Sequence record: MT446416.1
Reading direction: 5' to 3' (one strand)
Length of the DNA stretch: 64,000 nucleotides
Shown: one piece after another, positions 1-13,595 of the stretch
How positions within the stretch are numbered: the stretch's first letter is position 1
Layout: each line of letters starts with the position of its first letter
Notes under the pieces: model-generated
Seen by the model: only the letters and a program-made list of their open reading frames with translations
Told to the model about the DNA's origin: nothing
Database searches by the model: none
Program-made: the position numbers and the translations under genes

Positions 1-155
1 TGCTTATTTGTACCTAAAAGTATATACATCCATAATTCACTGTAATGTACATCTTGTGTATAAGGGTTGTTGTAACTTTTTGATACTATAACATCAAATT
101 CAGATGCATGAACCCTTGTGAACTTAAGAATATCTTTTTGTGTTATGATTCTCAT
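1..155 (-). CDS. Array A member, partial (runs off window)
   Basis: Hand translation: MRIITQKDILKF...LWMYILLGTNK. Confidence 0.85.
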   Translation of the reverse strand, partial: MRIITQKDILKFTRVHASEFDVIVSKSYNNPYTQDVHYSELWMYILLGTNK

Positions 156-367
156 ATCTTTTCCTGTATAAGCTTCTTAAGAATCTCAATATGTGAATTA
201 ACAGTTCTTTATTGATGTTGTGTTCCTAAGAGTGTCAGTACTATCATCTCTGAACGCAAAAGATTTTTTTCAAGTTCACTGATATCAGTTCTTGTATCAA
301 GTACTAAAAATTCTTGACTATTTTTTCTGAATAATGCCAAGTACTCTTGGTTTGATATTACCTTCAT
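152..367 (-). pseudogene. Array A member with an in-frame TAA
   Basis: MKVISNQEY...LLGTQHQ*RTVNSHIEILKKLIQEKI. TAA at 209-211 replaces the conserved Glu, and ATGA coupling is kept at both ends. Confidence 0.8.
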
Positions 368-594
368 AGTTTATCCCTGATGCCATTTAAAAGTGCTCTA
401 ATATGCTCATTGACAAAACGCTCTTGGGAATCTGTGTCTAGGGTGAGAAGCATTCTTAAATCTGAACTTTTGATATGATATTCTAAATCATTATTTGATT
501 CTTGCATCAGTTTCTGAAAGGATGAGAAGTTTGCTGCCATTAGTTCAATGTATTCTGCTGTTCCTAGGGGTTTGTGTATGTGCTGTCTGTGCAT
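364..594 (-). CDS. Array A member
   Basis: LDTDSQE variant motif. Confidence 0.8.
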   Translation of the reverse strand: MHRQHIHKPLGTAEYIELMAANFSSFQKLMQESNNDLEYHIKSSDLRMLLTLDTDSQERFVNEHIRALLNGIRDKL

Positions 595-806
595 TTTAAT
601 TGTATTACCCTTTTGAGTGTATTAATGTAATTATACACATTGGCTTCTTGATAGTTAGTTCCTAGAGTAGCTTGAACGTAGATTTCATTTAACTTAATAA
701 TTTTATCCGTATCTGGTAGTTTTGATGTGTTAATGGCAAATAACTTCAAAAACAGTCCATTTATGATTGTTCTGTATTCTTCTCCGGTAATGATTCGCAT
801 TTGCAT
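564..806 (-). CDS. Array A member
   Basis: TLGTNYQE. Confidence 0.85.
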   Translation of the reverse strand: MQMRIITGEEYRTIINGLFLKLFAINTSKLPDTDKIIKLNEIYVQATLGTNYQEANVYNYINTLKRVIQLKCTDSTYTNP

Positions 807-1012
807 GTTCTCAGTACTGATTCTTTAAGTTCATTGATGTAGCACTCTACATATTCTTCTTGTAGGTTTGTTCCGATATGTAACAGTACTCTTAAATCTG
901 CTCTCAGTACTTCTTTGTCATCTTCATCTATATCAGACAGTGTTATGTTTAAGAATTTACTTGAACTCTCTATAAGTAATATTACTGAATCACCTTTGCT
1001 TAAAATTTTCAT
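761..1012 (-). CDS. Array A member
   Basis: IGTNLQE. Confidence 0.85.
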   Translation of the reverse strand: MKILSKGDSVILLIESSSKFLNITLSDIDEDDKEVLRADLRVLLHIGTNLQEEYVECYINELKESVLRTCKCESLPEKNTEQS

Positions 1013-1220
1013 AATCTCTTTTTGCTTTCCTCGCCAAAAGGTACATATACGATTCTTCGTATTGTGCTTGGTAGTTTGTGTTTAAGAGTCGAAACAACTT
1101 CTGTTCTGCTAGAACGAGTTGCTTATCTTCATAACAACGATAGCGTATCAACTTTTTGTATTCGATGTTGATTACATCCATTACTATAAGCCTATGTTCA
1201 TCATCAGTCAAGTGTTTCAT
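990..1220 (-). CDS. Array A member
   Basis: LLNTNYQA. Confidence 0.85.
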   Translation of the reverse strand: MKHLTDDEHRLIVMDVINIEYKKLIRYRCYEDKQLVLAEQKLFRLLNTNYQAQYEESYMYLLARKAKRDYENFKQR

Positions 1221-1458
1221 GCTTTTTTCTTTTCCTGATGTTCTTAGTTAAAAGGTATATTAGTTTTCTATTGTATTCTTCCTGATAGTTTGTTCCTAAT
1301 AGTGCAAGAAGTTTTGCTTCAACTAGAGCTAATTGACGTTCTTCAAATGTGTGTTCCAGTATATACTTTGGGTTTGATTTTTTAGCGTAAGCACTATTAG
1401 TTTTCATTACAATCTTATGATATTCATTAACTGTTAGGATTTTTAAATTCTTGAGCAT
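1204..1458 (-). CDS. Array A member
   Basis: LLGTNYQE. Confidence 0.85.
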   Translation of the reverse strand: MLKNLKILTVNEYHKIVMKTNSAYAKKSNPKYILEHTFEERQLALVEAKLLALLGTNYQEEYNRKLIYLLTKNIRKRKKHETLD

Positions 1459-1684
1459 GTATCTTTTCCTTTATAGAGAATTTAAGATATCGAAGCATAC
1501 TTTCAATGTAATACTCTTGTCTGTCAGTTCCAAGAAAGTACATGAGTTGAATGTATAAAACTTCTGCACTCCTTTCGGCATGTGACTTGTTTGTGTCGTT
1601 TGGAAGTTGATTTGTAAGTTTTCTGGATTTAATTAATCGTTCTTTTAACTCATCGTCTGTTAAGTATATCATTTCACTTTTCAT
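1427..1684 (-). CDS. Array A member
   Basis: FLGTDRQE; close paralog of 1894..2130. Confidence 0.85.
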   Translation of the reverse strand: MKSEMIYLTDDELKERLIKSRKLTNQLPNDTNKSHAERSAEVLYIQLMYFLGTDRQEYYIESMLRYLKFSIKEKIHAQEFKNPNS

Positions 1685-1904
1685 TTACTTTTTCCTTAAT
1701 ACTCATTACAAGATGTTCAATCATATTTTGAACCATAAATTCTTGTTTATCAGTTCCAAGAACGTATGGTAGCTTCTGAAACAATACATTCGCAGACATT
1801 TCATATATTGATTGATTTGGAACGAACTTAAGAGTAATGTTATTGGCTTTTAACATCTTCTCTTGAAATTCTTCATTCGTTAAGTATATCATTTCATTTT
1901 GCAT
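1674..1904 (-). CDS. Array A member
   Basis: VLGTDKQE. Confidence 0.85.
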   Translation of the reverse strand: MQNEMIYLTNEEFQEKMLKANNITLKFVPNQSIYEMSANVLFQKLPYVLGTDKQEFMVQNMIEHLVMSIKEKVNEK

Positions 1905-2130
1905 TTACTTTTTCCTTAATAGTAATTTTGAGATATTTAATTATACGTTCAATGTGATACTCTTGTCTATCAGTTCCCAGAAGATATGGTAGTGATTGGA
2001 ATAAAACTTCTGCACTCCTTTCTGCTGGGGTTTGGTTTGTGTTGTGAGGAAGTTTATTTGTAAGTCTTTTGGATTTAGATAGTCTTTCTGATAACTCATC
2101 ATGTGTTAAGTATATCATTTCCTTTTGCAT
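1894..2130 (-). CDS. Array A member
   Basis: LLGTDRQE. Confidence 0.85.
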   Translation of the reverse strand: MQKEMIYLTHDELSERLSKSKRLTNKLPHNTNQTPAERSAEVLFQSLPYLLGTDRQEYHIERIIKYLKITIKEKVNAK

Positions 2131-2358
2131 TTACATTCTCTCATGTGCATTTTGGGTTAAAAGATCAATCCAGATTTCCACATATCGTTGTTGGTGTTGC
2201 GTCCCTAACAGTACACCTAACTTGGCTTCGGACTCTAATATCATTCTGGTTTTGAACGGTAGACTTTGAAATCCTATTGTAGCATCTAATTTGGTAATTG
2301 CATATTTGATTCGGATGAATCTTTCTTGTAATGTGATGTTGATCATTTCACAGTACAC
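2131..2358 (-). CDS. Array A member
   Basis: LLGTQHQQ. Confidence 0.85.
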   Translation of the reverse strand: MYCEMINITLQERFIRIKYAITKLDATIGFQSLPFKTRMILESEAKLGVLLGTQHQQRYVEIWIDLLTQNAHERM

Positions 2359-2600
2359 CTTAGTGGTTGGGTCATTTGATAAAAGTACAGCTTACCTTTG
2401 ATTTCCATTAGTAATTCATTTAATACGCGTTGGACCTCTGGTTCTTGATAGTTTGTCCCTAACAATGCACCCATCTTTAGCTCACGATACATAATCATCT
2501 TCTTACGGTGTTGAATTTCTGGGTTGTGATAGATTTCATTTCGTTTAGTTGAGATTTTAGCCATGCGTTCATGATATTCATCTGAATTTAAATTAATCAT
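2343..2600 (-). CDS. Array A member
   Basis: LLGTNYQE; start moved to MINLNS by comparison with paralogs. Confidence 0.8.
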   Translation of the reverse strand: MINLNSDEYHERMAKISTKRNEIYHNPEIQHRKKMIMYRELKMGALLGTNYQEPEVQRVLNELLMEIKGKLYFYQMTQPLRCTVK

Positions 2601-2838
2601 TTTTATTCTCCAAAGCATCACATTTATTTTCGATACAATTCATGAGTTCTCTAAGATAGTTTTTTACCTTACCTGACTGATAGTTCGTCCCTAGGAAGTT
2701 GCACAACACGGCTTCTATGATTTTGATTTTCCTGATATCAGGCTTCAATTTTTTGTTATTGAAGATTTGAATCCTTATATCTCTGGATGCATTTAAACGT
2801 TTTTGATATTCATGGTAAGTTAAATTAATCATTTTCAT
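2593..2838 (-). CDS. Array A member
   Basis: FLGTNYQS. Confidence 0.85.
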   Translation of the reverse strand: MKMINLTYHEYQKRLNASRDIRIQIFNNKKLKPDIRKIKIIEAVLCNFLGTNYQSGKVKNYLRELMNCIENKCDALENKND

Positions 2839-3053
2839 TTACGTTTAACCTCTCGCTGGAGGGCATCAATTAACATCAGTACAGCATTCTCTTGATAGTT
2901 TGTTCCTAAGAATGAAAGCATCTTTATATCAGACACTAAAATCAACTTCTTTGAGCGTTCAATAATGTTACTATTATAAACGGCGTTACGTGCTGGATAA
3001 GTTTTTGCAAGACGAACATAATATTCATCTTTACTTAAATTAATCATTTGCAT
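2835..3053 (-). CDS. Array A member
   Basis: FLGTNYQE. Confidence 0.85.
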   Translation of the reverse strand: MQMINLSKDEYYVRLAKTYPARNAVYNSNIIERSKKLILVSDIKMLSFLGTNYQENAVLMLIDALQREVKRK

Positions 3054-3262
3054 TTACTTTTAACCTCTTTAATTAGTGCATCAACCCATAGGTCTACATA
3101 CATTTGTTGATAGTTTGTCCCCAATAGTGCACCTACATAGAGTTCAGCTTTCATTGCGTGCTTTAGGTCAATAGGGATGCTCTTATCGTTTGATATCATT
3201 CTCCTTCTGCTGCCACATGTTTTCAGAAGCTTAACATATTCGTAACCTATTAATTTTCTCAT
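3044..3262 (-). CDS. Array A member
   Basis: LLGTNYQQ. Confidence 0.85.
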   Translation of the reverse strand: MRKLIGYEYVKLLKTCGSRRRMISNDKSIPIDLKHAMKAELYVGALLGTNYQQMYVDLWVDALIKEVKSKCK

Positions 3263-3474
3263 TCTTTTGATATCACCTTGTTGCGTAAGGCACTTAACAA
3301 TACGTCAGTGTAGATGTTTTGATAGTTTGTTCCTACGAATACACCCAACTTCATTTCAGCTATTATAACACATTTGTCCTCTTGTGCAATAGACTTGTCT
3401 AAAGAAATACTAACAACTTTCCTTCTTATAGCTTGTAACCTCCAATGATACTGATACTCATTTAGGGTTATCAT
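3259..3474 (-). CDS. Array A member
   Basis: FVGTNYQN. Confidence 0.85.
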   Translation of the reverse strand: MITLNEYQYHWRLQAIRRKVVSISLDKSIAQEDKCVIIAEMKLGVFVGTNYQNIYTDVLLSALRNKVISKE

Positions 3475-3709
3475 TCTCTCGTCTCCATATCTCGGTTCTA
3501 ATGTGTTGGCATTGTGCTTCGATGAACATATCTATTGATTTGGCAATTGCTTTTTTATCAGTGCCTGTCATCAGTACAAGCATCTCGGCCTCACAGTGAA
3601 GTAAACGCATGATATCATAGGGTAATATTTCAGATACCGTGTCATAGTGTTTCTGTGCCAGTGTCTGCAATAGTTTACAATACATTTTGTGGTTCATTCT
3701 TTGTCGCAT
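3458..3709 (-). CDS. Array A member (diverged)
   Basis: MTGTDKK variant. Confidence 0.7.
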   Translation of the reverse strand: MRQRMNHKMYCKLLQTLAQKHYDTVSEILPYDIMRLLHCEAEMLVLMTGTDKKAIAKSIDMFIEAQCQHIRTEIWRRENDNPK

Positions 3710-3945
3710 TGTTTATTCCATTCTTTTTTGGCCTTGGTGGTTTTATATTGGATTTGGTTTCTTAATGCTGATAAGTATCGTTGAATGAACAGATCTTGAT
3801 AGTTTGTCCCAATGAATTTCATAAGATAAACATCACCGTTGATAACATCCACTTCAGGTACACCATGTAATGCATTGTTATTTCTAAGGGTTCTAATAAG
3901 AGAGAACAGGGCAGTTTGATACTCAACTCCTGATAAAATCTTCAT
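3694..3945 (-). CDS. Array A member
   Basis: FIGTNYQD; likely start MKILSG. Confidence 0.8.
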   Translation of the reverse strand: MKILSGVEYQTALFSLIRTLRNNNALHGVPEVDVINGDVYLMKFIGTNYQDLFIQRYLSALRNQIQYKTTKAKKEWNKQCDKE

Positions 3946-4180
3946 ATTTTGCGTGGATGTATTCATCTAGTTTATCCTGTATAACATTCGTTAATTGATC
4001 GATATATTCTGTGCAAAACTTATCTTGATATTGAGTCCCCATAAAGTACAGCAACCATAGCTCATCAACTTTAGCTCGCATTTGGTTCCATGTAAGGGTG
4101 GGGTCATCGTAGACTATCCTTGCGACTGGGGTTAGTTTACGAACTATAGTTTCATATTCATCTTGTGTTAAGCGTCTCAT
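3923..4180 (-). CDS. Array A member
   Basis: FMGTQYQD. Confidence 0.85.
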   Translation of the reverse strand: MRRLTQDEYETIVRKLTPVARIVYDDPTLTWNQMRAKVDELWLLYFMGTQYQDKFCTEYIDQLTNVIQDKLDEYIHAKYEDFIRS

Positions 4181-4401
4181 TTACCTAAATCCCTGACATG
4201 ACATTTTAAGGCCGTGATGTGGTTGTCTACCATAACCTCCTGATAGTTTGTCCCTACAAATGGTATTAATGTTGAGTCTGTTAGTATAACATACTTTTCA
4301 TTGGATGTTAGTGATTCATCATCGTAAACTTGAAGTCTAAAGTTCTTCCCTTGTTCTAATCGTTTAAGATATTCTTGAGTGTTTATGTCTTTCATTTGCA
4401 T
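4177..4401 (-). CDS. Array A member
   Basis: FVGTNYQE. Confidence 0.85.
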   Translation of the reverse strand: MQMKDINTQEYLKRLEQGKNFRLQVYDDESLTSNEKYVILTDSTLIPFVGTNYQEVMVDNHITALKCHVRDLGK

Positions 4402-4610
4402 TTGTCCATAATGTATTTCTTGAGTGCAACTATGTGCTCATGGACATAACTTTCCTGATAGTTTGTCCCCAGTACAGCCATCATGCGTACATCGGTGGTG
4501 TTTATCTTGTGTTCAAATCGTGTTAAGCCTTTTTTTTGTAAAAGGGTATCGTATTTGTTTAATGCATCAATGATAATTCTCATCTTCTCTATATTACTTA
4601 AATGTTTCAT
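4392..4610 (-). CDS. Array A member
   Basis: VLGTNYQE. Confidence 0.85.
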   Translation of the reverse strand: MKHLSNIEKMRIIIDALNKYDTLLQKKGLTRFEHKINTTDVRMMAVLGTNYQESYVHEHIVALKKYIMDKCK

Positions 4611-4822
4611 ATTTTGTTTCTATGGTGCTCCATGAGTGTTTCTGTGTAGTTCTTCATGAATTTATCTTGAAACTGTGTCCCGATGAATTGTAAGACCCAT
4701 AGTGCATATATTCGTTCTTCCTTGTCCACCAAAGATAAATGTATATTATTATAAATCCTTTGTTCTTTATCTAGGGTAGACAGTACACGAGCCTCGTATT
4801 CACCTTGTGTTATTTTAATCAT
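4607..4822 (-). CDS. Array A member
   Basis: FIGTQFQD. Confidence 0.85.
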   Translation of the reverse strand: MIKITQGEYEARVLSTLDKEQRIYNNIHLSLVDKEERIYALWVLQFIGTQFQDKFMKNYTETLMEHHRNKI

Positions 4823-5034
4823 AGTTTGCTCTTAATGTATTTCTTGAGTGCATTTATATACACATTCAAGAAATGCTCCTGATAGTCTGTTCCCAAGAAT
4901 GCACCCAATAGTATATCATTTTCCAATACCTCGGCTAAGTTTAAATCAGAAGTCTCTTCATATACTATGAGGATTTCAAGTTGTCTGGCAGCAACGCGTT
5001 CGGTATATTGATGTGAGTTTGTAATGATATTCAT
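4819..5034 (-). CDS. Array A member
   Basis: FLGTDYQE, ends KSKL. Confidence 0.85.
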   Translation of the reverse strand: MNIITNSHQYTERVAARQLEILIVYEETSDLNLAEVLENDILLGAFLGTDYQEHFLNVYINALKKYIKSKL

Positions 5035-5242
5035 AGTTTACTCTTAATGTGGTTCTTGAGTGCAAATAAGTATTCCCCTACATAATACTCCTGAAAGTCT
5101 GTATCCAAAAATGCACCCATGAGTAAATCCTTCTCCATTGCCCTTGATAAGTTAAGGTCTACGCTTGAAAGGTATATCAGTAAGATTTCAGCCTGTGCCG
5201 AATTGAAACGTATCTTATATTCTTCTGGTGTTAAAAAATCAT
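5031..5242 (-). pseudogene. Array A member frameshifted in a homopolymer
   Basis: Reads ATG ATT TTT TAA. One more T in the run at 5233-5238 gives MIFLTPEEY...FLDTDFQE...KSKL, a close paralog of 4819..5034. Confidence 0.8.
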
Positions 5243-5445
5243 AGTTTACTCTTTATATCTTTTATTAAATGTAAAATCCAATCATTAACAAAACTTTCTT
5301 GGAAGTTGGTTCCCAGTCCAGCCATCATCCACCACTCCGATAGAATAAACTTTTTTTCATCCCTAGATAACTCATCTGGTATATATATATTCTTTCTATA
5401 TTCGATCATAAGATTATATAGTTGAAATTGTGTGATAATTTTCAT
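5239..5445 (-). CDS. Array A member
   Basis: GLGTNFQE, ends KSKL. Confidence 0.85.
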   Translation of the reverse strand: MKIITQFQLYNLMIEYRKNIYIPDELSRDEKKFILSEWWMMAGLGTNFQESFVNDWILHLIKDIKSKL

Positions 5446-5639
5446 AGTTTACCCGTTATATCTTCAATTAAATATGAAATCCAATCCTTGACATACCTTT
5501 CCTGAAAGTTAGTTCCAATGAATAGTGCCATAACCAATTCACGCTTATAGGCCATACCACGTTCATGTGACTTATACATTATCATAGCCATGTTATTGAT
5601 AAGTCTTTCGTGATGTTCTGCTTGAGTTAAAATACGCAT
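5442..5639 (-). CDS. Array A member (first in operon)
   Basis: FIGTNFQE; GGAG RBS. Confidence 0.85.
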   Translation of the reverse strand: MRILTQAEHHERLINNMAMIMYKSHERGMAYKRELVMALFIGTNFQERYVKDWISYLIEDITGKL

Positions 5640-5665
5640 AGGGACTCCATTAAAAATAATATCAA

Positions 5666-5698
5666 TCCTATAATATACGATTCGTATAAAAAGTCAAT
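5666..5698 (-). promoter_or_regulatory. sigma70-like promoter for array A, with a 15-bp palindrome in the spacer
   Basis: TTGACT-16-TATTAT on the - strand; TATACGA-T-TCGTATA at 5674-5688. Confidence 0.7.
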
Positions 5699-5888
5699 AA
5701 CATTTTATTAGTAATACCCCTTTATCGAAGTCGCTAAGGTTACCCGCAGTTTAGCCCCCTACGCATTTTGCCATAGTCCAATCCCTTTTTATTCATAAAA
5801 GTCAAGGGATTACCTATGCATTTTTTTAACGCTGAAGTTTAAAAATGCCTTGACTTTTTTATGATTCAGTACTAAATCCTTTTACGCA

Positions 5889-6098
5889 TTAATCCTTCGT
5901 TACGCTTACGATTATCTGTGTATCCCCATAGTCCTGCCATACTTCCACGCCAGCCGCCGACCTGGTTAGTCGTGCTGTCATCTGCTTAATGGTCTTAGGC
6001 TTTAGTGGAACCTGTTGCAGTACTGTACGCATGGCACTATCGACGTTATCATGTACGCCTGCAATAGTACCTAGAACGCTGTATACTGTATAGATCAT
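5889..6098 (-). CDS. Hypothetical early protein
   Basis: ORF with a GGAG RBS. Confidence 0.7.
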   Translation of the reverse strand: MIYTVYSVLGTIAGVHDNVDSAMRTVLQQVPLKPKTIKQMTARLTRSAAGVEVWQDYGDTQIIVSVTKD

Positions 6099-6166
6099 GT
6101 GTATGTACTCCTGATATAGTTAAGGCCGCTACAAGGCGGCCTATGATGTTTGATGATGTGTAACGC

Positions 6167-6568
6167 TTACAACCCTAAGATAGTACGTGCTTCGTTACGT
6201 TCCTTAGTTTGCTGCATGATGTAAGCTAACTGGTCCTTGCTAATGTATCCCTTGTCCATAGCTTCACGGATAGATACATCATAAGCACCGAACCCCGTGC
6301 GAACGATACGCACATCATTCAGGTTAGTGTTATATATACCGCCGAGATCAACGGATTCGAATACTGCATCAACTGTATATTCGTTGTTACCGTCATTGAA
6401 GTTTTCAATCTCAATATTACGGGACACGGCCCAACGTTTACAGCTACCGATAATGCGGCAATATTCCGGTTGCATATGACCATTACTTACAGCGTGCTCA
6501 AGGCCAGCTTTACCAAAAGTCCGGGCCAGTACTAAAACGTCAGCGTAAGAAGTGATAGTGAAAGTCAT
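6167..6568 (-). CDS. Hypothetical early protein
   Basis: Start corrected to MTFTITSY (AGGAG RBS); the track extension is promoter/leader sequence. Confidence 0.75.
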   Translation of the reverse strand: MTFTITSYADVLVLARTFGKAGLEHAVSNGHMQPEYCRIIGSCKRWAVSRNIEIENFNDGNNEYTVDAVFESVDLGGIYNTNLNDVRIVRTGFGAYDVSIREAMDKGYISKDQLAYIMQQTKERNEARTILGL

Positions 6569-6657
6569 GATGATACTCCTTAAGTTAGGAGGGAGAACCA
6601 TTTCCCCCTCTCTATGTAAAACATTATACATGAATCTAAGTACTATGCAAGTACTTT

Positions 6658-6990
6658 TTACATTTTAATACCTGGATTCAGGTAGCGGTGAGATCCATAC
6701 TCTGGGTAGGTTTCAGTCCAGTACTGTAAATCTATAGTACCTTTAGCGTTAATCTTGTCTACCAGCTTATTCATCTTAGCGTATACTACATTAGCATCGA
6801 TGCGTTTAAAGCCAGTGGCTTTAGTGAAGTAGTAGTGATTTGCTTCACTATCATTAAGGATATACCGAGCACCGTTTGCCGTTTGTGCAATAATGATTGA
6901 GTATTCTACTTCCCGATCCAGTCCGTCAATGAATACAGATGAAACATTAGTACGGATGAAAGCGTTTACGATAGCGATTGAAGTACTCAT
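6658..6990 (-). CDS. Hypothetical early protein
   Basis: ORF with RBS and its own promoter (~7044-7072). Confidence 0.75.
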   Translation of the reverse strand: MSTSIAIVNAFIRTNVSSVFIDGLDREVEYSIIIAQTANGARYILNDSEANHYYFTKATGFKRIDANVVYAKMNKLVDKINAKGTIDLQYWTETYPEYGSHRYLNPGIKM

Positions 6991-7149
6991 TTTGAATCTC
7001 CTAACTTTGTGGGCCGTCGCACCATTGCCGCCCTACGAGATACATTATTGCAGTACTGCTATACTTTGTCAATAGTTTTTTATTAATAGTTTTAGTACTG
7101 GCAGTACATCCACCAGCAGATAGTTACTCACCGTTATTAACTATATATT

Positions 7150-7240
7150 TTAGATACACCTATGCACCCGGTGGGCTAGTTTTTGTCTATGCGTATATAA
7201 TAGCAAAGGGACTTACCGGAGTCAATCCCTTTTTTATTCT
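7150..7240 (-). ncRNA. Small-RNA-like unit, family 1 (RCCC-AYN-GGGUGC), copy 1
   Basis: TTGACT(7220-25)-17-TATTAT(7197-7202), then GCCCACCGGGTGCATAGGTGTATCTA; no RBS or ORF. Confidence 0.5.
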
Positions 7241-7242
7241 TT

Positions 7243-7500
7243 TTATGAAATATCTTCGATGTAGTCGGCCCATTTCATTTTTTCAGTACTGTCAATGGCT
7301 ACCGGATTATTTGGATCAAACCATTCACCATTACCGCAATACATACCCACGGCTACGGTTTTATAGCCATCCTGTGCCGTATTCCATGACATTGCACGAT
7401 AGATATGGCCTTTAATTGGTGTTAGTACTGGTAACGTTTTATGGTCTTCTACGTAGGCCATAGCTTGAGGATTTACCCGATATTGTGTGAACTGTTCCAT
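7243..7500 (-). CDS. Hypothetical early protein
   Basis: ORF with its own promoter. Confidence 0.75.
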   Translation of the reverse strand: MEQFTQYRVNPQAMAYVEDHKTLPVLTPIKGHIYRAMSWNTAQDGYKTVAVGMYCGNGEWFDPNNPVAIDSTEKMKWADYIEDIS

Positions 7501-7576
7501 TATGTTTCCCCTTGTAGTTAGTAAAGTTATTACATCAGTACTATCAAGCTATGTCAATAGTACTGAAATAAAACTT

Positions 7577-7801
7577 TTAGATTAGATTATTGATACCTTC
7601 GATGGTAGACTCGCTTTCTTCTTTCTCCCATTGTCGGTAGTACTTCCATGTTTCATGATATGTGGCGATTAGTTCATCTTTTTGATCCTGGTTACATGCC
7701 AGTACTGAATCACGGTGAGCGGTGTTATAGATAGAATCGAATGATTTCTTCTCTTCTGCCAGGTTAGCTACTTCCCGCATCAGTTCATCAAAGTTAGCCA
7801 T
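7577..7801 (-). CDS. Hypothetical acidic early protein
   Basis: ORF with an AGGAG RBS. Confidence 0.75.
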   Translation of the reverse strand: MANFDELMREVANLAEEKKSFDSIYNTAHRDSVLACNQDQKDELIATYHETWKYYRQWEKEESESTIEGINNLI

Positions 7802-7868
7802 TTTAATACTCCTTTTAGTGGGGGAGGATATCTCCCCCTATGCAAAACATTATACGCTTTATTCAGTA

Positions 7869-8132
7869 CTATGCAAGTACTTTTTTCATATAAACATTAA
7901 ATTCTACACCGCCGTAACCTTCCACGATGATATGTTTTGCGTTATCACGCTTGCACATAGTGAAACCGTTGTTGATATGTTCTGCATTTTCCAGGGCTAC
8001 ATCACCGATAGCGGCACATACAGCACTAATAACAGTATTCCGCAAAGTACTGGTATCATTAGCGGTCATAGTAGTTTGCAGTACTACGTTGTCATATACG
8101 TGTGCATTGATAGTGATTTCAATAGCGTTCAT
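7869..8132 (-). CDS. Hypothetical early protein
   Basis: Start corrected to MNAIEIT (AGGAG RBS). Confidence 0.75.
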   Translation of the reverse strand: MNAIEITINAHVYDNVVLQTTMTANDTSTLRNTVISAVCAAIGDVALENAEHINNGFTMCKRDNAKHIIVEGYGGVEFNVYMKKVLA

Positions 8133-8253
8133 GGTGTATCTCCTGGACTTGAGGGGAAACCATTTCCCCCTCTCGATGTAAAACATTATACGCGAATTGC
8201 GATAGTATGCAAGTACTTTTTTAAAATAGTTTTCAGTACTGAATACTTATATA

Positions 8254-8340
8254 ATAGATACATTTATGCACCCGGTGGGTTAGATTGTTTTCATGCATAT
8301 ATAATAGCAAAGGGACTGACCTGAGTCAATCCATTTTTTT
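8254..8340 (-). ncRNA. Small-RNA-like unit, family 1, copy 2
   Basis: TTGACT...TATTAT promoter, then ACCCACCGGGTGCATAAATGTATCTA; no ORF. Confidence 0.5.
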
Positions 8341-8348
8341 AATCTTTT

Positions 8349-8933
8349 TTATCGTGTTATAGTTACGGCTTTTACATCACGCTTTTTATAGTACTGATTC
8401 CAGATATTGCGGGTTAAACCGTAATCAAGTACTTTAATCAAGCCGTTACGATCCTGGCCGATATTCTGTTTTCTGATATCTCTTATAGTTAGTGTTGATA
8501 AGGTATCATCAACGTGTTGTAGTGCATCAGCAAAGCGGTGCTGGCGTTCAATGGTATTACGTTTAATATTGCACTTTAATTCGTTGCACGCGTTAACGTG
8601 CTTTACGCTGCCTTTGCTTGCAGTACTCAAACGATCCATAACAATAAACATATTATCAGGATCGCTTAAATGCATATGCACCTTAGCAAAGTACTGTTTC
8701 ATTTGAGGGCGGTCATAATCTAAAAAATTCCATACCTTACATTCAGTTTCATTTTGTTCTACACCCGCATCACAATTCGCGACCTTGATCACTAACCGAT
8801 CATTTAAAGCGAATACTATACGGGAAGAACCCGCACCGATGATCTCAAGACCAGCTAACCGACAAGCTGAAAGGATCTCTTTGTTGGTTTCCATTTCTGA
8901 CAGTGTACGGATAAATTTAGTATAATTACGCAT
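8349..8933 (-). CDS. Protein kinase-like (ePK/APH fold) protein
   Basis: IGAGSSRIV glycine loop, VIK lysine, NETE helix-C Glu, DIRKQN catalytic loop and LDYG; start MRNYTK. Confidence 0.75.
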   Translation of the reverse strand: MRNYTKFIRTLSEMETNKEILSACRLAGLEIIGAGSSRIVFALNDRLVIKVANCDAGVEQNETECKVWNFLDYDRPQMKQYFAKVHMHLSDPDNMFIVMDRLSTASKGSVKHVNACNELKCNIKRNTIERQHRFADALQHVDDTLSTLTIRDIRKQNIGQDRNGLIKVLDYGLTRNIWNQYYKKRDVKAVTITR

Positions 8934-8980
8934 TGCATTTACTCCTTGAATTGATGAAACTATATTACAGTACTTTACTA

Positions 8981-9208
8981 TCAATGGCAACTACTTTTTT
9001 TAACATTAACGGCGTGGATCACTTCCTTAGTGTTTTTAGTACTGAATACTTTTGCCGCTCCTTGTTCGACCGTGATGCGATAGCGACCATTAACATCAAC
9101 CATATTAATAAAGTCCGGCGTGCTGAATGGTGTTGTTTTACATTTCAGTACGGTTAACAGTTCCACCAGCGATGTAGTTTATTTGATACGTTTTTCTAAA
9201 GTAATCAT
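8981..9208 (-). pseudogene. Early gene interrupted by an in-frame TAA at codon 10
   Basis: ATG at 9208 with a GGGG RBS reads MITLEKRIK*TTSLVELL..., TAA at 9179-9181, in frame with track ORF 8981..9166. Confidence 0.55.
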
Positions 9209-9262
9209 TTTGTTTTCCCCCGTGTTGGTATATATACATAGTACTAAAACATTTGAGTACTG

Positions 9263-9517
9263 TCAACGTGAAATTCTTTTAATAGCAGTATTATACTGCT
9301 GGTGCTCATACAAACTAATTTTACCAGTACTCTCGATAACGATTCTATTGTTAGTGTCTACATCGATAACACGCAGTTTACCGTTGCTTAACTTCCTAGG
9401 TAATATGTTACCATTAATAAACTCATTAGCAAGCTGTACGGCCTTTGTGATGATTCTCTGAGGGGCTTTATAGTGTACCCGCAAGATATTATCTTTAGAT
9501 AGTTGTACCTTAATCAT
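9263..9517 (-). CDS. Hypothetical early protein
   Basis: ORF with RBS. Confidence 0.7.
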   Translation of the reverse strand: MIKVQLSKDNILRVHYKAPQRIITKAVQLANEFINGNILPRKLSNGKLRVIDVDTNNRIVIESTGKISLYEHQQYNTAIKRISR

Positions 9518-9579
9518 TTTAGTTTATCCTATAAAAAAAGCGGGAACTGATCCCGCCGTGTTGTTAGTACTGCTAGGTA

Positions 9580-9984
9580 TTAGATAACCTGTCGGCGTTT
9601 ACTGAATACAGTAACACTGTTTCCCTTGCGGTCGTGGCGGATCTCTCGTTGGTTGCGAATCAGTACACTTGGACGCTTCAAGTTAGCCAGATGATCCGCG
9701 TGAGTCCATGCATTCGAATTTACGGAAACTTTAATATCAGAACCCGCGACGAATTCATCTTGAGCGTTAAGAATTGCCGCCAGTTCTTCAGCTTGTTTTT
9801 GTTCTGCTGCTGTCAGTACTGGCTCAGGTGAATTCACAATATCAGAGATTTCTTTGAACTGTACGGCCCAGCGTTGGCCTTTCGGTGCATCTTTGCCCAT
9901 GTCTTTAAATAGCTCACCTTCCTCGCGTGCAACAATACGGGCAGCTTCACGGGTAGCGTAGAATTTAGTAATCATGGTATACAT
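9580..9984 (-). CDS. Hypothetical early protein, paralog of 21493..21756
   Basis: Shared TRE.AR..AR, FKDMG, RWAV and HDRKGN.VTV. Confidence 0.8.
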   Translation of the reverse strand: MYTMITKFYATREAARIVAREEGELFKDMGKDAPKGQRWAVQFKEISDIVNSPEPVLTAAEQKQAEELAAILNAQDEFVAGSDIKVSVNSNAWTHADHLANLKRPSVLIRNQREIRHDRKGNSVTVFSKRRQVI

Positions 9985-10070
9985 CCTATTAGTTAAGTTA
10001 GTACTACAAGCGAGAGTCTATTATAAAGTACTATCTGTGTAATGTCAAATAGTACTTTAAATGGATTCTA

Positions 10071-10394
10071 TTACATGTCTTTCTTACGTTTTACATCGTA
10101 GTAGCGAACTGTTATTTCTTTGTTAATCTCTTTTTCGATGCGGTGAATAACTTTTTCTTTCGGGTTGAAACCTATAACGGTTTCTTTAATGATCTCCAAA
10201 CCAGTGTATTCGCCTTGCGTACCGTAACCGTATGTAAAGGTTTCGTGTCCCAGGTCTTCCCAGCGGTCGCCAATTAACGCAGACACGTAGCAAGAGTGGT
10301 AAGTATTGCCGTTCCGATCAGTCCAGCGATTAACTTTAATGTCAAAGGAGGTTACAATTTTCAGTTCTACTTTCTGGGTAAGGATCATAGCCAT
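10071..10394 (-). CDS. Hypothetical early protein, paralog of 16639..16983
   Basis: Shared RW...GNTY.S, F.YGYG and DVKRKKD. Confidence 0.8.
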   Translation of the reverse strand: MAMILTQKVELKIVTSFDIKVNRWTDRNGNTYHSCYVSALIGDRWEDLGHETFTYGYGTQGEYTGLEIIKETVIGFNPKEKVIHRIEKEINKEITVRYYDVKRKKDM

Positions 10395-10481
10395 TTTTAT
10401 TTCTCTCTTTTAGTTAGGAGGGGAACCATTCCCCTCACTTGATGTAATCTATTATACAGTACTAAGATACTTTGTCAATAC

Positions 10482-10757
10482 TTAAGTATTGTAAATGTCG
10501 TGAATAGTGATAAAGTTTTTACGACCGTAAACCTGTAAATCGGTATCAATGTAGTGTTTATCTAGTACATCCTCGACGCTTAACGCGGTGTCGTGGATAT
10601 CTTCGTAGAATTGAGGATCTACAATCTTGCTTAAGTCATCCGGTGTTAACTTATCGTTAAGCCATTGCACCGCCTGGATATCTGCTTCACGTTTCCAGTC
10701 TTGCAGGTTAGTAGTCAGTACTTGCTCGATTTCGTTAGCTGTCAGTAGAATCCGCAT
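10482..10757 (-). CDS. Hypothetical acidic early protein
   Basis: ORF with an AAGGA RBS and its own promoter. Confidence 0.75.
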   Translation of the reverse strand: MRILLTANEIEQVLTTNLQDWKREADIQAVQWLNDKLTPDDLSKIVDPQFYEDIHDTALSVEDVLDKHYIDTDLQVYGRKNFITIHDIYNT

Positions 10758-10825
10758 TTTAATGTTTCCTTATCAGTGGTTGATGTAAGTATTATACTCG
10801 TTTACTTTCTATTGTCAATCTTTTT

Positions 10826-10901
10826 ATCAGGGGAGTTTTTCGTATGTCTTACTCCTGGACTACTTAACGGGGTTACTTGTTTCGTTCCCCCGTCCTGATG
10901 T
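10826..10901 (-). ncRNA. Structured RNA, family 2 (14-nt-loop hairpin), copy 1
   Basis: Promoter-driven, no ORF; GGAGT-AAGACATACGAAAA-ACTCC hairpin at 10832-10855; near-identical to 20819-20895. Confidence 0.55.
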
Positions 10902-10975
10902 AAAACATTATACTTGATTTTAAGTACAATGCAAGTACTTTTTAAAAATAGTTTTCAGTACTAGCCACCAGCAAA

Positions 10976-11062
10976 TAATAGATACATTTATGCACCCTGT
11001 GGGCTGATTTGTTTCTATGCGTATATAATAGCAAAGGGACTTACCGGAGTCAATCCCTTTTT
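10976..11062 (-). ncRNA. Small-RNA-like unit, family 1, copy 3
   Basis: Promoter, then GCCCACAGGGTGCATAAATGTATCTA; Chi site just downstream (10965). Confidence 0.5.
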
Positions 11063-11071
11063 TAATTATTT

Positions 11072-11221
11072 TTAAACTTGTTTTGGGTTGCGATATGTGA
11101 TAGCGTTCGGGTACATTTGTTTAATGTTATTCCATGCCTGGTTAACATTATAACCACTTGAGCGAATCAGTTGGTTACTACCGACACCTTGAAACACTAC
11201 TTCGAATAAGAATTCTTTCAT
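11072..11221 (-). CDS. Small hypothetical protein (49 aa)
   Basis: Hand translation MKEFLFEVVFQG...; ATGA-coupled to the upstream gene. Confidence 0.65.
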   Translation of the reverse strand: MKEFLFEVVFQGVGSNQLIRSSGYNVNQAWNNIKQMYPNAITYRNPKQV

Positions 11222-11391
11222 GCTTTCACCTCGCGATCTGCTTTACCTTTACGCCACGCTGTTGCTAATTGTTCGCGTTGCCATAAGTCGAGTGATACGT
11301 AAAGTTTTGCATTATCACCCTTCGGATATTCGCCAGTAGTACCAATCCGATAAAACAGATCTTTCAGTACTGTCAATTCTACCTGGATCAT
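11218..11391 (-). CDS. Small hypothetical early protein
   Basis: Start corrected to MIQVELT. Confidence 0.7.
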   Translation of the reverse strand: MIQVELTVLKDLFYRIGTTGEYPKGDNAKLYVSLDLWQREQLATAWRKGKADREVKA

Positions 11392-11477
11392 TATACTTTC
11401 CTCTTTGTTAGGAGGGGAACTATTCCCCTCTCGATATAAAACATTATACACTTTATTCAGTACTGTGCAAGTACTTT

Positions 11478-11690
11478 TTAATCTTTCAGCCAATGATCCT
11501 GAATGAATTTTTCACCAAATCCCTGTTTCATGGATTCTAACAGGCGTTCACGGTGAGCGTTGGCGAATTGCTCCGTACTATGCGTTACACCTGGTTGATA
11601 TCTGGATTCACCATTGGGGGCGATGTATTGCACATCCCACGGTTTAGCGTTAGTATCAGACCATTTACGAACGATTAGTTGACCTTGCAT
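11478..11690 (-). CDS. Hypothetical early protein
   Basis: ORF with its own promoter module. Confidence 0.75.
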   Translation of the reverse strand: MQGQLIVRKWSDTNAKPWDVQYIAPNGESRYQPGVTHSTEQFANAHRERLLESMKQGFGEKFIQDHWLKD

Positions 11691-11776
11691 TTTTCTTTCC
11701 TCTTAGTGGGGAGAATCATTTCTCCCCTTCATGTAAACTATTATACAGTACTATAATCTATTGTCCAGTACTTTTT

Positions 11777-11965
11777 TTACAGTTTATGAATCAATTCTTT
11801 ATCTAAGCGATAGCGTACATTATTAATAGTAACGGCATTGTTTTTAATGCTACGCTGTACTGGTCCACCAGCAATAACAAACGTTGCCTTATTACCCCGA
11901 ACAATGATAGCACTTCCTGGATTGCTGTATTCATCTTGTACTAAAATACTTGATAAGTTTTCCAT
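11777..11965 (-). CDS. Hypothetical early protein
   Basis: ORF with its own promoter module. Confidence 0.75.
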   Translation of the reverse strand: MENLSSILVQDEYSNPGSAIIVRGNKATFVIAGGPVQRSIKNNAVTINNVRYRLDKELIHKL

Positions 11966-12052
11966 TTTTATTTCCTCTTAGTAGGGGAAGATGTTTCCCC
12001 TTGATGTAATACAGTATACACTATCTTTCAGTACTGTCAATACTTTTTAGTA

Positions 12053-12409
12053 TTACGATAAAATCATGATAGGATATTCACTATCGATCAGTACTTCGAA
12101 TCCAAAACCTTCGTACCATTCTTTAAGATTAAAGGCGTTATCTTCTCCCGTATCGCATTCTAAAATGATACAATCGGAATCATCAGCGGCATCAATAAAG
12201 GCATTCATTAATTCGTTACCTTCACCATTGCCCCGACTATCAGGATCAACATAAAGAGAATCAATAAACGCTACACGGTCATAATCAAGATCCGGTGCAA
12301 TGATTCCACGTTTTTCAAACCAGTACTGCAATTGTGCTACTTTGCCCTGTACTTGATAGCCAGTGATCTCGCCATTGTCAGTAGTACGCGTGATATGTTG
12401 TATTCCCAT
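12053..12409 (-). CDS. GNAT-family acetyltransferase
   Basis: Motif A: IDSLYVDPDSRGNGEGNELM; C-terminal WYEGFGF. Confidence 0.85.
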   Translation of the reverse strand: MGIQHITRTTDNGEITGYQVQGKVAQLQYWFEKRGIIAPDLDYDRVAFIDSLYVDPDSRGNGEGNELMNAFIDAADDSDCIILECDTGEDNAFNLKEWYEGFGFEVLIDSEYPIMILS

Positions 12410-12472
12410 GATTTCTATCCTCAGTTAAGATATAAAATATTATACACTATCTTTCAGTACTGTCAATACTTT

Positions 12473-12730
12473 TTATCTCATAGATCTATGCCAACAATTA
12501 CGCGGGGGACGTTTAAAAGTACTATCATGATCCTCCTGGCAAGTTATGCAGTACATGCACCCTACAACGGCCTGGCGTCGATTCTCAGGGATTAAATCAC
12601 CGCAATCATGACAATGTGTTAGTGATTCTCTTTGTGCGTTAATTTGCTTTCTAGCGTGGTTTACGGCGGCCTGAATCACTGCGTTAATCTCGTCTTGTTC
12701 GGCCCCGTCTTTCGCGAATCCTACTGCCAT
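12473..12730 (-). CDS. ybiI: DksA/TraR C4 zinc-finger protein (YbiI-like)
   Basis: MAVGFAKD..., ESLTHCHDCGDLIPENRRQA...CMYCITCQE; closely follows the YbiI/TraR pattern. Confidence 0.85.
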   Translation of the reverse strand: MAVGFAKDGAEQDEINAVIQAAVNHARKQINAQRESLTHCHDCGDLIPENRRQAVVGCMYCITCQEDHDSTFKRPPRNCWHRSMR

Positions 12731-13065: not shown

Positions 13066-13256
13066 AACTTTTTTCTGTCATTGATTAATGCTTTCAGTAC
13101 TATACTAATGATTTGCAATGATTCATCAATGACTATAAAATTATTATCTTTCATTAGATGATAGTTACCATTGATATTATATTCTAATGAGTACTGTTTA
13201 CGTTTAATTTTTGATAATGTTTCTATTTGTTTTTGTACTGATTTCATGCTAATCAT
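13059..13256 (-). CDS. Hypothetical protein
   Basis: ORF track. Confidence 0.6.
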   Translation of the reverse strand: MISMKSVQKQIETLSKIKRKQYSLEYNINGNYHLMKDNNFIVIDESLQIISIVLKALINDRKKLK

Positions 13257-13505: not shown

Positions 13506-13595
13506 TTTATTTCTCTCTTAGGTTAAGTTAACTACTGTTTATAAAACTTATTATACAGTACTATCAATCTATGTCAATAGTACTGGTAATATATT

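What the first reader, a model, noticed from the sequence alone, without database searches (positions are those of the whole stretch)
1..5639. Gene accordion: at least 26 tandem, highly diverged ~70-aa paralogs sharing only LGT(N/D)YQE
Seen: translationally coupled copies behind one sigma70 promoter, with a conserved C-terminal motif and helix and a hypervariable middle. Sub-groups show recent duplication (1427/1674/1894; the KSKL-ending copies at 4819-5639). Inference: a constant scaffold with a variable surface, as expected for diversifying anti-defence or host-protein-binding effectors. I recognise no known domain.
Basis: partly seen in the sequence, partly recalled or inferred. Interest (0 to 1): 0.65.

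Follow-up and report, generated by a model that had tools for sequence, protein, structure and literature searches.

The report
Jumbo-phage operon of ~30 small paralogs
A giant E. coli phage carries, right after its terminal repeat, one operon of about 26 back-to-back genes for related ~70-residue three-helix proteins with a fixed core and varied surfaces. The family is real, old, selectively maintained and has never been described, and it most likely acts on host proteins early in infection.

Summary
The window is Escherichia virus TH47, an Asteriusvirus jumbo phage. On the minus strand, 1-5639 holds 26 tandem copies of one family. One is cut by the window edge, one is frameshifted and one has a nonsense codon. 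Five more copies lie outside the window, giving 31 per genome.

The copies overlap or abut. They follow a single sigma70-type promoter about 40 bp inside the inner end of the ~21 kb direct terminal repeat.

AlphaFold2 gives a confident small helical bundle (pLDDT 97). The LGT(N/D)YQE motif sits at the turn between helix 2 and helix 3. No Pfam family and no PDB relative was found; the only database match is an unnamed PHROG.

Orthologues evolve at dN/dS of about 0.4, so they are coding and constrained. Exposed helix positions are close to neutral.

It is not an active accordion:
- Paralogues have a median identity of 28% and a maximum of 64% (dS at least 0.56).
- Sixteen orthogroups are collinear in eight phages.
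- About 20 accessory cassettes come and go.

The family is confined to RaK2-like phages: 73 clusters among 1.84 billion proteins.

Best reading: an early battery of diversified host-protein or defence binders. Function is inferred, not shown.

The parts
1..5639 (-). Tandem array of 26 copies of the LGT(N/D)YQE family, in one transcription unit. Copy coordinates: 5442-5639, 5239-5445, 5034-5240 (frameshifted), 4819-5034, 4607-4822, 4392-4610, 4177-4401, 3923-4180, 3694-3966, 3458-3709, 3259-3474, 3044-3262, 2835-3053, 2593-2838, 2343-2621, 2131-2358, 1894-2130, 1674-1904, 1427-1684, 1204-1458, 990-1220, 761-1012, 564-806, 364-594, 152-367 (nonsense codon), and 3-155 (cut by the window edge).
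   Evidence: ORF list. Alignment A1. Profile hits with E-values from 7e-27 to 4e-10. 23 of 24 copies match phrog_4148. Pooled orthologue dN/dS 0.39-0.42.
5670..5697 (-). Sigma70-type promoter (TTGACT, 16-nt spacer, TATTAT) with an A/T-rich upstream stretch. It is the only strong promoter match for the whole array. A GGAG ribosome-binding site lies 6 nt before the first ATG at 5639.
   Evidence: Conserved in fEgEco12 (alignment). It belongs to the same motif class as 26 other early-type promoters in the window (27 observed against 1.3 expected).
5736..5737 (.). Inferred inner boundary of the ~21 kb direct terminal repeat: unique DNA at 5736 and below, repeat at 5737 and above. The array is therefore the first transcription unit of the unique genome.
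   Evidence: The fEgEco12 repeat is 20,993 bp and was confirmed by PhageTerm and restriction digests (PMC13070987). It was mapped onto the window by alignment. vB_Ec-M-J is annotated with a 21,525 bp repeat that ends 99 nt before its first array gene.
5034..5240 (-). Copy broken by a 1-nt deletion in a T-run directly after its ATG (T6 here, T7 in vB_Ec-M-J). It is otherwise intact.
   Evidence: Intact orthologues of 70-71 aa, 79-87% identical, occur in six relatives. The TH47 record is flagged UNVERIFIED, so a homopolymer sequencing error is possible.
152..367 (-). Copy with a single in-frame stop in place of the motif's Glu. The remaining C-terminal helix is still readable.
   Evidence: Orthologues in the relatives are intact (71 aa, 81-92% identical).
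1427..2130 (-). The most similar paralogue trio: 1427-1684, 1674-1904 and 1894-2130. Identities are 45-64% and dS is 0.56-1.29.
   Evidence: DNA repeat D1 (300 nt, 73% identical). The outer two copies form orthogroup 0, which is present twice in seven of the eight close phages (UE-S1 has one copy). The middle copy is an accessory cassette found in three of them.
4607..4822 (-). Accessory cassette with no orthologue at 60% identity or more in eight other phages. Wastewater contigs join 4606 directly to 4819, which skips exactly this unit.
   Evidence: and (joint that skips 212 nt).
5239..5445 (-). Second TH47-specific cassette; the best hit in other phages is 48% identical or less.
4177..4401 (-). 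Accessory cassette that is 100% identical at protein level in fEgEco12 and WPEC5 and absent from five other relatives (33% or less).
210..5113 (.). Thirteen copies of a 25-nt DNA repeat that encodes the LGTNYQE motif. Copies are 72-92% identical to the reference copy and spaced 212-215 nt apart or multiples of that. The gene junctions also share a conserved sequence (AAACTATGA type). Both offer microhomology for unit-length recombination.
   Evidence: families D2, D4 and D10.

Best explanation
**What it is (shown).** The array is an old expansion of a phage-specific family of ~70-residue proteins, specific to the RaK2-like jumbo-phage lineage.
- Each copy folds into a small three-helix bundle in which a short N-terminal strand is bridged to the Thr of the motif.
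- LGT(N/D)YQE is a fold element. Gly ends helix 2, Thr makes the bridge, and the N/D...E pattern looks like an N-capping box for helix 3. The T/S-x-x-E pattern before helix 1 looks like a second capping box.
- The hydrophobic core is constant, while surface positions and net charge differ from copy to copy.

**How it is expressed (inferred).** All ~26 genes sit behind one host-type sigma70 promoter, about 40 bp inside the unique genome next to the left terminal repeat, and their frames overlap. They should therefore be transcribed by host RNA polymerase soon after DNA entry and made together as one polycistronic, translationally coupled batch.

**What it does (inferred, untested).** The copies are a battery of small binders. 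Each is specialised for a different host or defence protein, and they contribute to host takeover and host range.

**How it evolves.** The repertoire changes by gain, loss and exchange of whole cassettes, helped by the conserved 25-nt motif and junction sequences. It does not change by rapid amplification.
For: **Reality and size of the family.**: 31 copies, with E-values down to 7e-27.

**Fold.**
- pLDDT is 97.3 and 96.6, and pTM is 0.79 and 0.82.
- Both models show helices plus a beta-bridge, between residue 2 and Thr43 in one model and between residue 4 and Thr51 in the other.

**Constant core, variable surface.**
- Column entropy and per-site pN/pS along helix 3 alternate with helical periodicity.
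- pI runs from 4.6 to 9.8.

**Selection.**
- Pooled dN/dS is 0.39-0.42 against seven phages.
- This is about twice the 0.18-0.26 of neighbouring terminal-repeat genes at similar dS.
- Each paralogue keeps its own middle region (omega 0.37-0.43), which argues for individual specialisation.

**Early-operon architecture.**; position at the terminal-repeat boundary.

**Not in virions.** The phAPEC6 proteome lacks gp470c-489c.

**Cassette dynamics.**
- 57 orthogroups among 254 copies in nine phages.
- 16 are universal and collinear in eight phages, and about 20 are accessory.
- Wastewater contigs show skips of 212-474 nt, one exactly one unit.
- The DNA-level motif repeat is described.

**Narrow distribution.**
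- 73 clusters at 50% identity among 1.84 billion proteins.
- The family is present in Alcyoneusvirus K64-1 and phiKp_21 and in metagenomic relatives with the same gene layout.
Against: - There are no expression data. Metatranscriptome contigs cover parts of the array but cannot show transcription, and no Asteriusvirus transcriptome was found in the literature.
- No region has dN/dS above 1, so there is no clear arms-race signature. The site values are pairwise, pseudo-replicated and noisy.
- A backbone of 16 orthogroups conserved in order in eight phages looks more like fixed early functions than fast-changing counter-defence.
- There is no sequence or fold similarity to any known anti-defence or host-takeover protein.
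- Equimolar coupled translation would also suit a multi-subunit assembly.
Confidence: 0.45

Rival explanations
1. The paralogues are subunits of one hetero-oligomeric assembly made early in infection, such as a helical-bundle lattice, scaffold or chaperone-like complex. Translational coupling would set their stoichiometry.
For: Overlapping or abutting frames throughout one operon. A collinear backbone of 16 orthogroups in eight phages. A small helical-bundle fold of a kind that often packs against other helices.
Against: - More than half of the orthogroups are accessory, and two TH47 copies are broken.
- Turkey5 has only 21 copies and shares just two orthogroups at 60% identity.
- K64-1 has about 13 dispersed copies.
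- A fixed complex should not tolerate this variation.
- The monomer models are confident on their own.
- Oligomer prediction could not be run.
Confidence: 0.15
2. The copies are small nucleic-acid-binding regulators, helix-turn-helix-like or RNA-binding, that retune host or phage gene expression.
For: - They are small helical proteins in an early region.
- About half the copies are basic (pI 9 or above).
- Phage G's expansion of about 35 zinc ribbons was proposed to encode transcription factors or DNA-binding proteins (PMC7824862).
Against: - There is no HTH or other DNA-binding Pfam match. The best was a single sub-threshold HTH_65 hit at E 0.16.
- No DNA-binding fold appears among the structural matches. 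The best Z is 6.5, and all matches are generic helices.
- Several copies are acidic (pI 4.6-5.5).
- The conserved polar residues are explained by helix capping.
Confidence: 0.12
3. The array is functionless, selfishly expanded DNA that is now decaying.
For: Two of the 26 copies in the window are disrupted. Presence and absence vary between phages. dN/dS is higher than in flanking genes.
Against: - dN/dS is about 0.4 overall and 0.20-0.22 in helix 2 and the motif.
- 24 of 26 frames are open despite synonymous saturation between paralogues.
- Co-variation is strong enough to give pLDDT 97 from paralogues alone.
- The orthologues of both broken copies are intact in the relatives checked, and the TH47 record is UNVERIFIED.
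Confidence: 0.05
4. It is an active gene accordion: recent amplification of one gene under strong selection, as with poxvirus K3L.
For: Tandem head-to-tail units of about 212-215 nt with conserved junction and motif DNA. Skips of 212-474 nt, one exactly one unit, in environmental contigs.
Against: - Median paralogue identity is 27.7% and the maximum is 64%.
- dS is at least 0.56 even for the closest pair, against about 0.2 between phage isolates.
- Copy number is 27-33 in eight close phages with conserved order.
Confidence: 0.03

Closest known systems
Multigene families at the genome ends of large eukaryotic DNA viruses (African swine fever virus MGF110/360/505; poxvirus terminal host-range families). 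This comparison rests on established knowledge and was not tested here.
   Same: Tandem, deeply diverged paralogues lie next to terminal repeats. The complement varies between isolates by gain and loss of whole genes. They are non-structural and are presumed to act on host responses.
   Different: The host is bacterial. The proteins are only about 70 aa with an unrelated fold. All copies sit in one translationally coupled operon behind one host-type promoter. No function has been shown.
Lineage-specific expansion of about 35 zinc-ribbon proteins in Bacillus phage G (Iyer et al. 2021, PMC7824862)
   Same: A paralogue expansion of comparable size in a jumbo phage, also of unknown role. That paper called the phage G expansion unprecedented.
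   Different: The fold is different: there are no Cys/His ligands and the protein is a helical bundle. The phage lineage is different. Here the arrangement, selection and pan-repertoire have been worked out.
Host-takeover modules of small early genes in or next to terminal redundancies (Bacillus phage SPO1 gp37-60; T5 pre-early genes; T4 early 'monkey-wrench' proteins). This comparison rests on established knowledge.
   Same: Clusters of small ORFs at the genome end, read from strong host-sigma promoters. The known products bind and disable host proteins.
   Different: Those modules are collections of unrelated genes. This one is a single family expanded about 30-fold.
Poxvirus gene accordion (K3L amplification; established knowledge)
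   Same: Tandem head-to-tail units, with repeat microhomology that would permit unequal recombination.
   Different: Accordion copies are near-identical and transient. These copies are saturated at synonymous sites and are orthologous across a genus.
phrog_4148 and phrog_28039 (PHROGs v4, unknown function)
   Same: 23 of 24 window copies match phrog_4148, with E-values down to 2e-25. Nine also match phrog_28039.
   Different: The PHROG entry gives no name, function or description. It adds nothing beyond showing that the cluster exists.

Membership tests
phrog_4148 (unnamed phage protein cluster) | Significant match to the family profile | tested here: met
   23 of 24 copies match; best E-value 2e-25.
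Gene accordion (recent tandem amplification) | Near-identical tandem copies | tested here: not met
   Maximum identity 64% and median 27.7%. dS is 0.56 for the closest pair and saturated for most pairs.
Gene accordion (recent tandem amplification) | Copy number swings between close isolates | tested here: not met
   27-33 copies in eight close Asteriusvirus genomes, with 16 orthogroups collinear. Gain and loss of single cassettes does occur.
Terminal multigene family of a large DNA virus (by analogy with ASFV MGFs) | Tandem diverged paralogues adjacent to a terminal repeat | tested here: met
   The array starts about 98 nt inside the inner boundary of the terminal repeat.
Terminal multigene family of a large DNA virus (by analogy with ASFV MGFs) | Complement differs between isolates | tested here: met
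   39 orthogroups occur among eight phages and only 16 are universal. 18 of Turkey5's 20 copies form orthogroups found in no other phage.
Terminal multigene family of a large DNA virus (by analogy with ASFV MGFs) | Modulates host defence or host range | not testable with these tools
   This needs deletion mutants and host panels.
Early host-takeover operon | Host-sigma promoter, and expression at the start of infection | tested here: inconclusive
   A promoter consensus is present and conserved. No transcriptome exists. Metatranscriptome contigs are uninformative.
Helix-turn-helix or other DNA-binding regulators | Profile or fold match to a DNA-binding domain | tested here: not met
   Pfam and NCBIfam give nothing above threshold. 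A PDB sequence profile gives nothing. Foldseek and VIA-align give only generic helices, with Z of 6.5 or less.
Virion structural or internal proteins | Detected in purified particles | tested here: not met
   None of phAPEC6 gp470c-489c is among its 62 virion proteins (PMC7247149 Table 1). Caveat: small proteins can escape mass spectrometry.
Known anti-defence proteins (anti-CRISPR, anti-restriction and similar) | Sequence or structural similarity to a characterised inhibitor | tested here: not met
   No match in Pfam, PHROGs with a named function, PDB or BFVD. No dedicated anti-defence library was available.

The most novel reading that the evidence does not exclude
The array is a phage-encoded library built on one dedicated binder scaffold: a fixed three-helix core presenting about 30 different surfaces. 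Each cassette neutralises a different host defence or takeover target. The set of cassettes a phage carries, reshuffled by unit-length recombination at the conserved 25-nt motif, helps set its host range. This would be a bacterial-virus counterpart of the terminal multigene families of giant eukaryotic viruses. Together with the neighbouring array of 32 or more copies of a second family, it would mean that about 25-30 kb of the early genome is given over to two such libraries.
Probability: 0.22. Interest if true: 0.85.

Novelty: new variant of a known kind. Interest (0 to 1): 0.6.

Why it matters
Paralogue expansions of this size are rare in phages. A ~35-copy expansion in phage G was called unprecedented (PMC7824862). 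I found no paper that describes this family, its fold or its arrangement, although the genes sit in dozens of public genomes annotated as 'hypothetical protein'.

It offers a compact, testable system:
- one promoter;
- about 30 small soluble proteins on one scaffold;
- natural presence/absence variants across sequenced phages;
- hosts that are laboratory E. coli strains.

If the copies are binders of host or defence proteins, the array would be a ready source of new inhibitors. It would also help explain how these jumbo phages infect many strains. If instead the copies form one assembly, that would be a new kind of early phage structure.

Tried and rejected
- **Family libraries.** Pfam, NCBIfam and a PDB sequence profile gave nothing above noise.
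- **Fold searches.** Foldseek against the PDB, run on both models, gave no hit with E-value of 0.001 or below. VIA-align against about 48,000 chains gave best Z of 5.5 and 6.5, all generic helical hairpins or bundles including membrane helices. I rejected these as uninformative. BFVD returned only family members.
- **ESM Atlas.** There was no usable feature hit. Its own model of the 121Q orthologue is poor (pLDDT 0.59), so I ignored the structure rows. The first Atlas call failed because the service was busy.
- **Link to the neighbouring family.** A profile-profile comparison with the neighbouring EE-x-FQ-x-S family showed no relationship (probability 0.1), so the two families are not merged.
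- **Own genome.** No whole genome is held for this window. I searched the phage record through its locus handle instead.
- **Expression.** Four wastewater metatranscriptome runs hold only contigs of about 130-1,100 nt from relatives. They cannot show transcription, strand or level.
- **Turkey5 comparison.** I considered the sharp drop in similarity at the terminal-repeat boundary as evidence that the array is hypervariable, and did not rely on it. The two retained orthologues and the single comparable gene downstream of the array are also divergent (dS 0.85 and 1.26, against 0.20 in the repeat). The unusually conserved repeat may therefore be the anomaly.
- **Literature.** Searches on Asteriusvirus, RaK2, phAPEC6, Sharanji, jumbo-phage paralogues and gene accordions found only generic remarks, such as that about 10% of RaK2 proteins are paralogues.

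Full report
**Identity and setting**

The first 6 kb of the window is 100% identical to Escherichia virus TH47. This is record MT446416.1, 352 kb, genus Asteriusvirus, unannotated and flagged UNVERIFIED. It is 86-91% identical over most of its length to about 35 other Asteriusvirus genomes from E. coli and Salmonella. Window position 1 is record position 81,726. No cellular genome is held for the window, so I reached whole phage records through locus handles.

**The observation**

- Between 3 and 5639 the minus strand carries 25 open frames of 51-92 aa. All contain a G-T-x-x-Q-(E/D) motif.
- The apparent gap at 5035-5238 is a 26th copy. Its frame is displaced by one base in a T-run directly after the ATG: six T here and seven in vB_Ec-M-J. 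Six relatives have intact orthologues of 70-71 aa.
- The short ORF at 209-367 is a full copy, 152-367, with one nonsense codon at the Glu of the motif. Its orthologues are intact.
- A profile of 24 copies (A1) finds 31 copies in the TH47 record, all on one strand. Twenty-six lie in the window. One lies immediately to the left, and two pairs lie about 2 kb and about 14 kb further downstream.
- Adjacent genes overlap by 4-46 nt or abut.
- The only strong promoter match is TTGACT-16-TATTAT at 5697-5670, with a GGAG site before the first ATG.
- The looser motif TTGACW-N16-18-TAWWAT occurs 27 times in the window against 1.3 expected. Twenty-six are on the minus strand and none is inside the array.
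- No minus-strand terminator-like site lies within the array.

So the description of about 26 translationally coupled copies behind one sigma70-type promoter holds at the sequence level.

**Position in the genome**

In fEgEco12 the physical ends were determined by PhageTerm and restriction mapping, and the direct terminal repeat is 20,993 bp (PMC13070987). Its first array gene starts at 21,091. Aligning that junction to the window puts the inner end of the repeat at 5736/5737. That is about 40 bp upstream of the -35 element and 98 nt upstream of the first ATG. vB_Ec-M-J is annotated the same way.

The repeat itself carries about 55 small genes, each spaced with its own promoter. The array is the first transcription unit of the unique genome and is read in the same direction, away from the left end. 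Whether this end enters the cell first is not known.

**The protein**

- No Pfam or NCBIfam family matches. Twenty-three of 24 copies match phrog_4148, which has no name or function.
- AlphaFold2 was run on the 65-aa first copy using only the paralogues as alignment. It gives pLDDT 97.3 and pTM 0.79, with helices at 6-27, 29-39 and 46-64 and a beta-bridge between residue 2 and Thr43.
- A typical 72-aa copy with a 92-sequence alignment gives pLDDT 96.6 and pTM 0.82. The fold is the same, with helix 1 kinked and a bridge between residue 4 and Thr51.
- The motif therefore sits exactly at the turn between helix 2 and helix 3. My reading, an inference from the models and from standard helix-capping rules, is as follows. 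Gly terminates helix 2. Thr anchors the N-terminal strand. (N/D)-x-x-(E/D) is an N-capping box. The conserved (T/S)-x-x-E near residue 5-8 is the capping box of helix 1.
- Conserved hydrophobic residues in helix 3 recur at i, i+4, i+7 and i+11 (profile states 56, 60, 63, 67). The positions between them are highly variable.
- pI runs from 4.6 to 9.8, and GRAVY is negative for all copies.
- Structure searches found no relative. Foldseek against the PDB gave nothing at E-value 0.001 or below. VIA-align gave best Z of 5.5 and 6.5 among generic helical matches. BFVD returned only family members.

**Selection**

I paired TH47 copies with best hits of at least 60% identity in eight other phages and applied Nei-Gojobori counting.

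| Gene class | Pooled dN/dS | dS |
|---|---|---|
| Array family, against seven phages | 0.39-0.42 | 0.20-0.30 |
| Neighbouring terminal-repeat genes | 0.18-0.26 | similar |
| Downstream region | 0.28-0.35 | - |

By protein region, omega is as follows:

| Region | omega |
|---|---|
| N-terminus | 0.43 |
| Helix 1 | 0.43 |
| Middle | 0.37 |
| Helix 2 | 0.22 |
| Motif | 0.20 |
| Helix 3 | 0.41 |

- Single exposed positions (states 54, 57, 58, 61) have pN/pS of 0.8-1.4. Core positions have 0.1-0.4.
- These site values are pairwise against one reference, and so are pseudo-replicated. They are also affected by gene overlaps at the termini.
- Conclusion: the genes are coding and constrained, and each paralogue conserves its own 'hypervariable' middle. 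Surfaces are relaxed or mildly diversifying. There is no region-wide positive selection.

**Age and dynamics**

- Within TH47 the median paralogue identity is 27.7%. The closest pair, 1894 and 1427, is 64% identical with dS 0.56. Most pairs are saturated at synonymous sites.
- Profile counts per genome are 31 (TH47), 31, 32, 27, 33, 32, 29 and 30 in eight close phages. Turkey5 has 21, and Klebsiella phage K64-1 (Alcyoneusvirus) has about 13.
- Clustering 254 copies from nine loci at 60% identity gives 57 orthogroups. Sixteen are present in all eight close phages in the same order. About 20 are accessory cassettes inserted at fixed points. Two are unique to TH47: 4607-4822 and 5239-5445.
- Orthogroups 33 and 34 appear restricted only because the other loci were fetched with shorter flanks. 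Whole-record searches do find those distal copies.
- The motif is conserved at the DNA level: 13 copies of a 25-mer, 72-92% identical to the reference copy, spaced 212-215 nt apart or multiples of that. The gene junctions are also conserved.
- Wastewater contigs from relatives join 4606 to 4819, 4143 to 4383 and 2546 to 3021. These skip 212, 239 and 474 nt; the first removes exactly one unit.

This is an old, stably inherited family with cassette turnover. It is not a recent accordion.

**Distribution**

- An exhaustive HMMER search of 1.84 billion representative proteins found 73 clusters at E-value 0.001 or below. All are 52-102 aa except one 5,271-aa hit, which has ten short matched stretches and is probably spurious.
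- The word-based search found only relatives of the same kind, many on contigs of about 350 kb.
- Two of the most distant hits lie on metagenomic contigs with the same layout: tight runs of 60-100 aa genes followed by 150-200 aa genes.
- In K64-1 and phiKp_21 there are 62-aa short forms. There are also 115-128 aa proteins in which the module is followed by an extra C-terminal domain.

**Function**

- Orthologues (phAPEC6 gp470c-489c) are absent from that phage's 62-protein virion proteome.
- No transcriptome of an Asteriusvirus was found. RNA-library contigs are uninformative on transcription.
- The reading I favour rests on several observations: the early position, the host-type promoter, the constant core with copy-specific surfaces and charges, the copy-specific constraint, the non-virion status and the cassette variation. 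On that basis the array is a co-expressed battery of small binders aimed at different host or defence proteins. I give this reading about 0.45.
- The main rival is a hetero-oligomeric assembly (0.15). A nucleic-acid-binding role (0.12) is less likely, and neutral decay (0.05) and an active accordion (0.03) are largely excluded.

**Comparison and novelty**

- The closest analogues work alike but are not homologous. They are the terminal multigene families of African swine fever virus and poxviruses, the host-takeover modules of SPO1, T5 and T4, and the ~35-copy zinc-ribbon expansion of phage G.
- Published papers on RaK2-like phages mention paralogues only in passing. CBB is said to have 22 paralogous ORFs, and about 10% of RaK2 proteins are said to be paralogues.
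- I therefore rate this a new variant of a known kind: an uncharacterised family with an unusual single-operon, ~30-fold arrangement at the terminal-repeat boundary.

No N stretches were filled. No alternative genetic code was used. Read laying was given 6,000 letters. The two broken copies are phage genes of unknown function, and I read them through by reference only.

Noticed in passing
Left of the window: TH47 record about 62,400-81,400 (L001 about 700-19,700, minus strand): A second, larger paralogue family fills the 19 kb downstream of the array. It has at least 32 ORFs of 103-212 aa that share little beyond an acidic-x-FQ-x-S-(L/T)-(V/I) motif about two-thirds of the way along. There is no Pfam match. 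The family is split over about 20 PHROGs of unknown function. No profile relationship to the LGT family was found. Four LGT-family copies are interspersed within it.
   Followed up: partly
window 5670-63135, mostly minus strand: There are 27 sigma70-type promoter matches against 1.3 expected. They fall into two near-identical sub-types. One ends AGTACTGTATAAT. The other has a -35 element embedded in a G+C hairpin (TTGACTYCGGTMAG...), so it doubles as a terminator-like site. The second sub-type recurs six times between 41,128 and 56,748.
   Followed up: partly
window 31,100-34,800 (query positions 5,100-8,800): A ~110-130 nt element recurs many times in the corresponding regions of 121Q and Turkey5 at 84-94% identity. 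This suggests a dispersed intergenic repeat in this part of the genome.
   Followed up: no
L003 6504-6869 and 9849-10196; L004 5586-5957 and 6078-6464 (Klebsiella phages K64-1 and phiKp_21): In Alcyoneusvirus the LGT module occurs as the N-terminal half of 115-128 aa proteins. Their C-terminal ~55 residues form a second conserved, unannotated domain with a shared E-E-A-x-x-(F/Y)-(I/C)-x-x-N-N pattern.
   Followed up: no
window 5641-8665 against L011 (phage Turkey5): The terminal-repeat side is 89-95% identical between TH47 and Turkey5, but similarity collapses at the repeat/array junction. Only three short 69-78% segments match inside the array. The two retained orthologues have dS 0.85, against 0.20 in the repeat. 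This hints at recent exchange of the terminal repeat between otherwise divergent phages.
   Followed up: partly
window 24,000-36,000: GC skew changes sign at about 24 kb, from negative to positive. The predicted outer end of the terminal repeat (about 26.7 kb) lies just past this point. No tRNA genes occur anywhere in the 64 kb window.
   Followed up: no
window 1-4000 against 6000-24,000: The array is more A+T-rich (31-35% G+C) than the adjacent terminal-repeat genes (37-40%).
   Followed up: no
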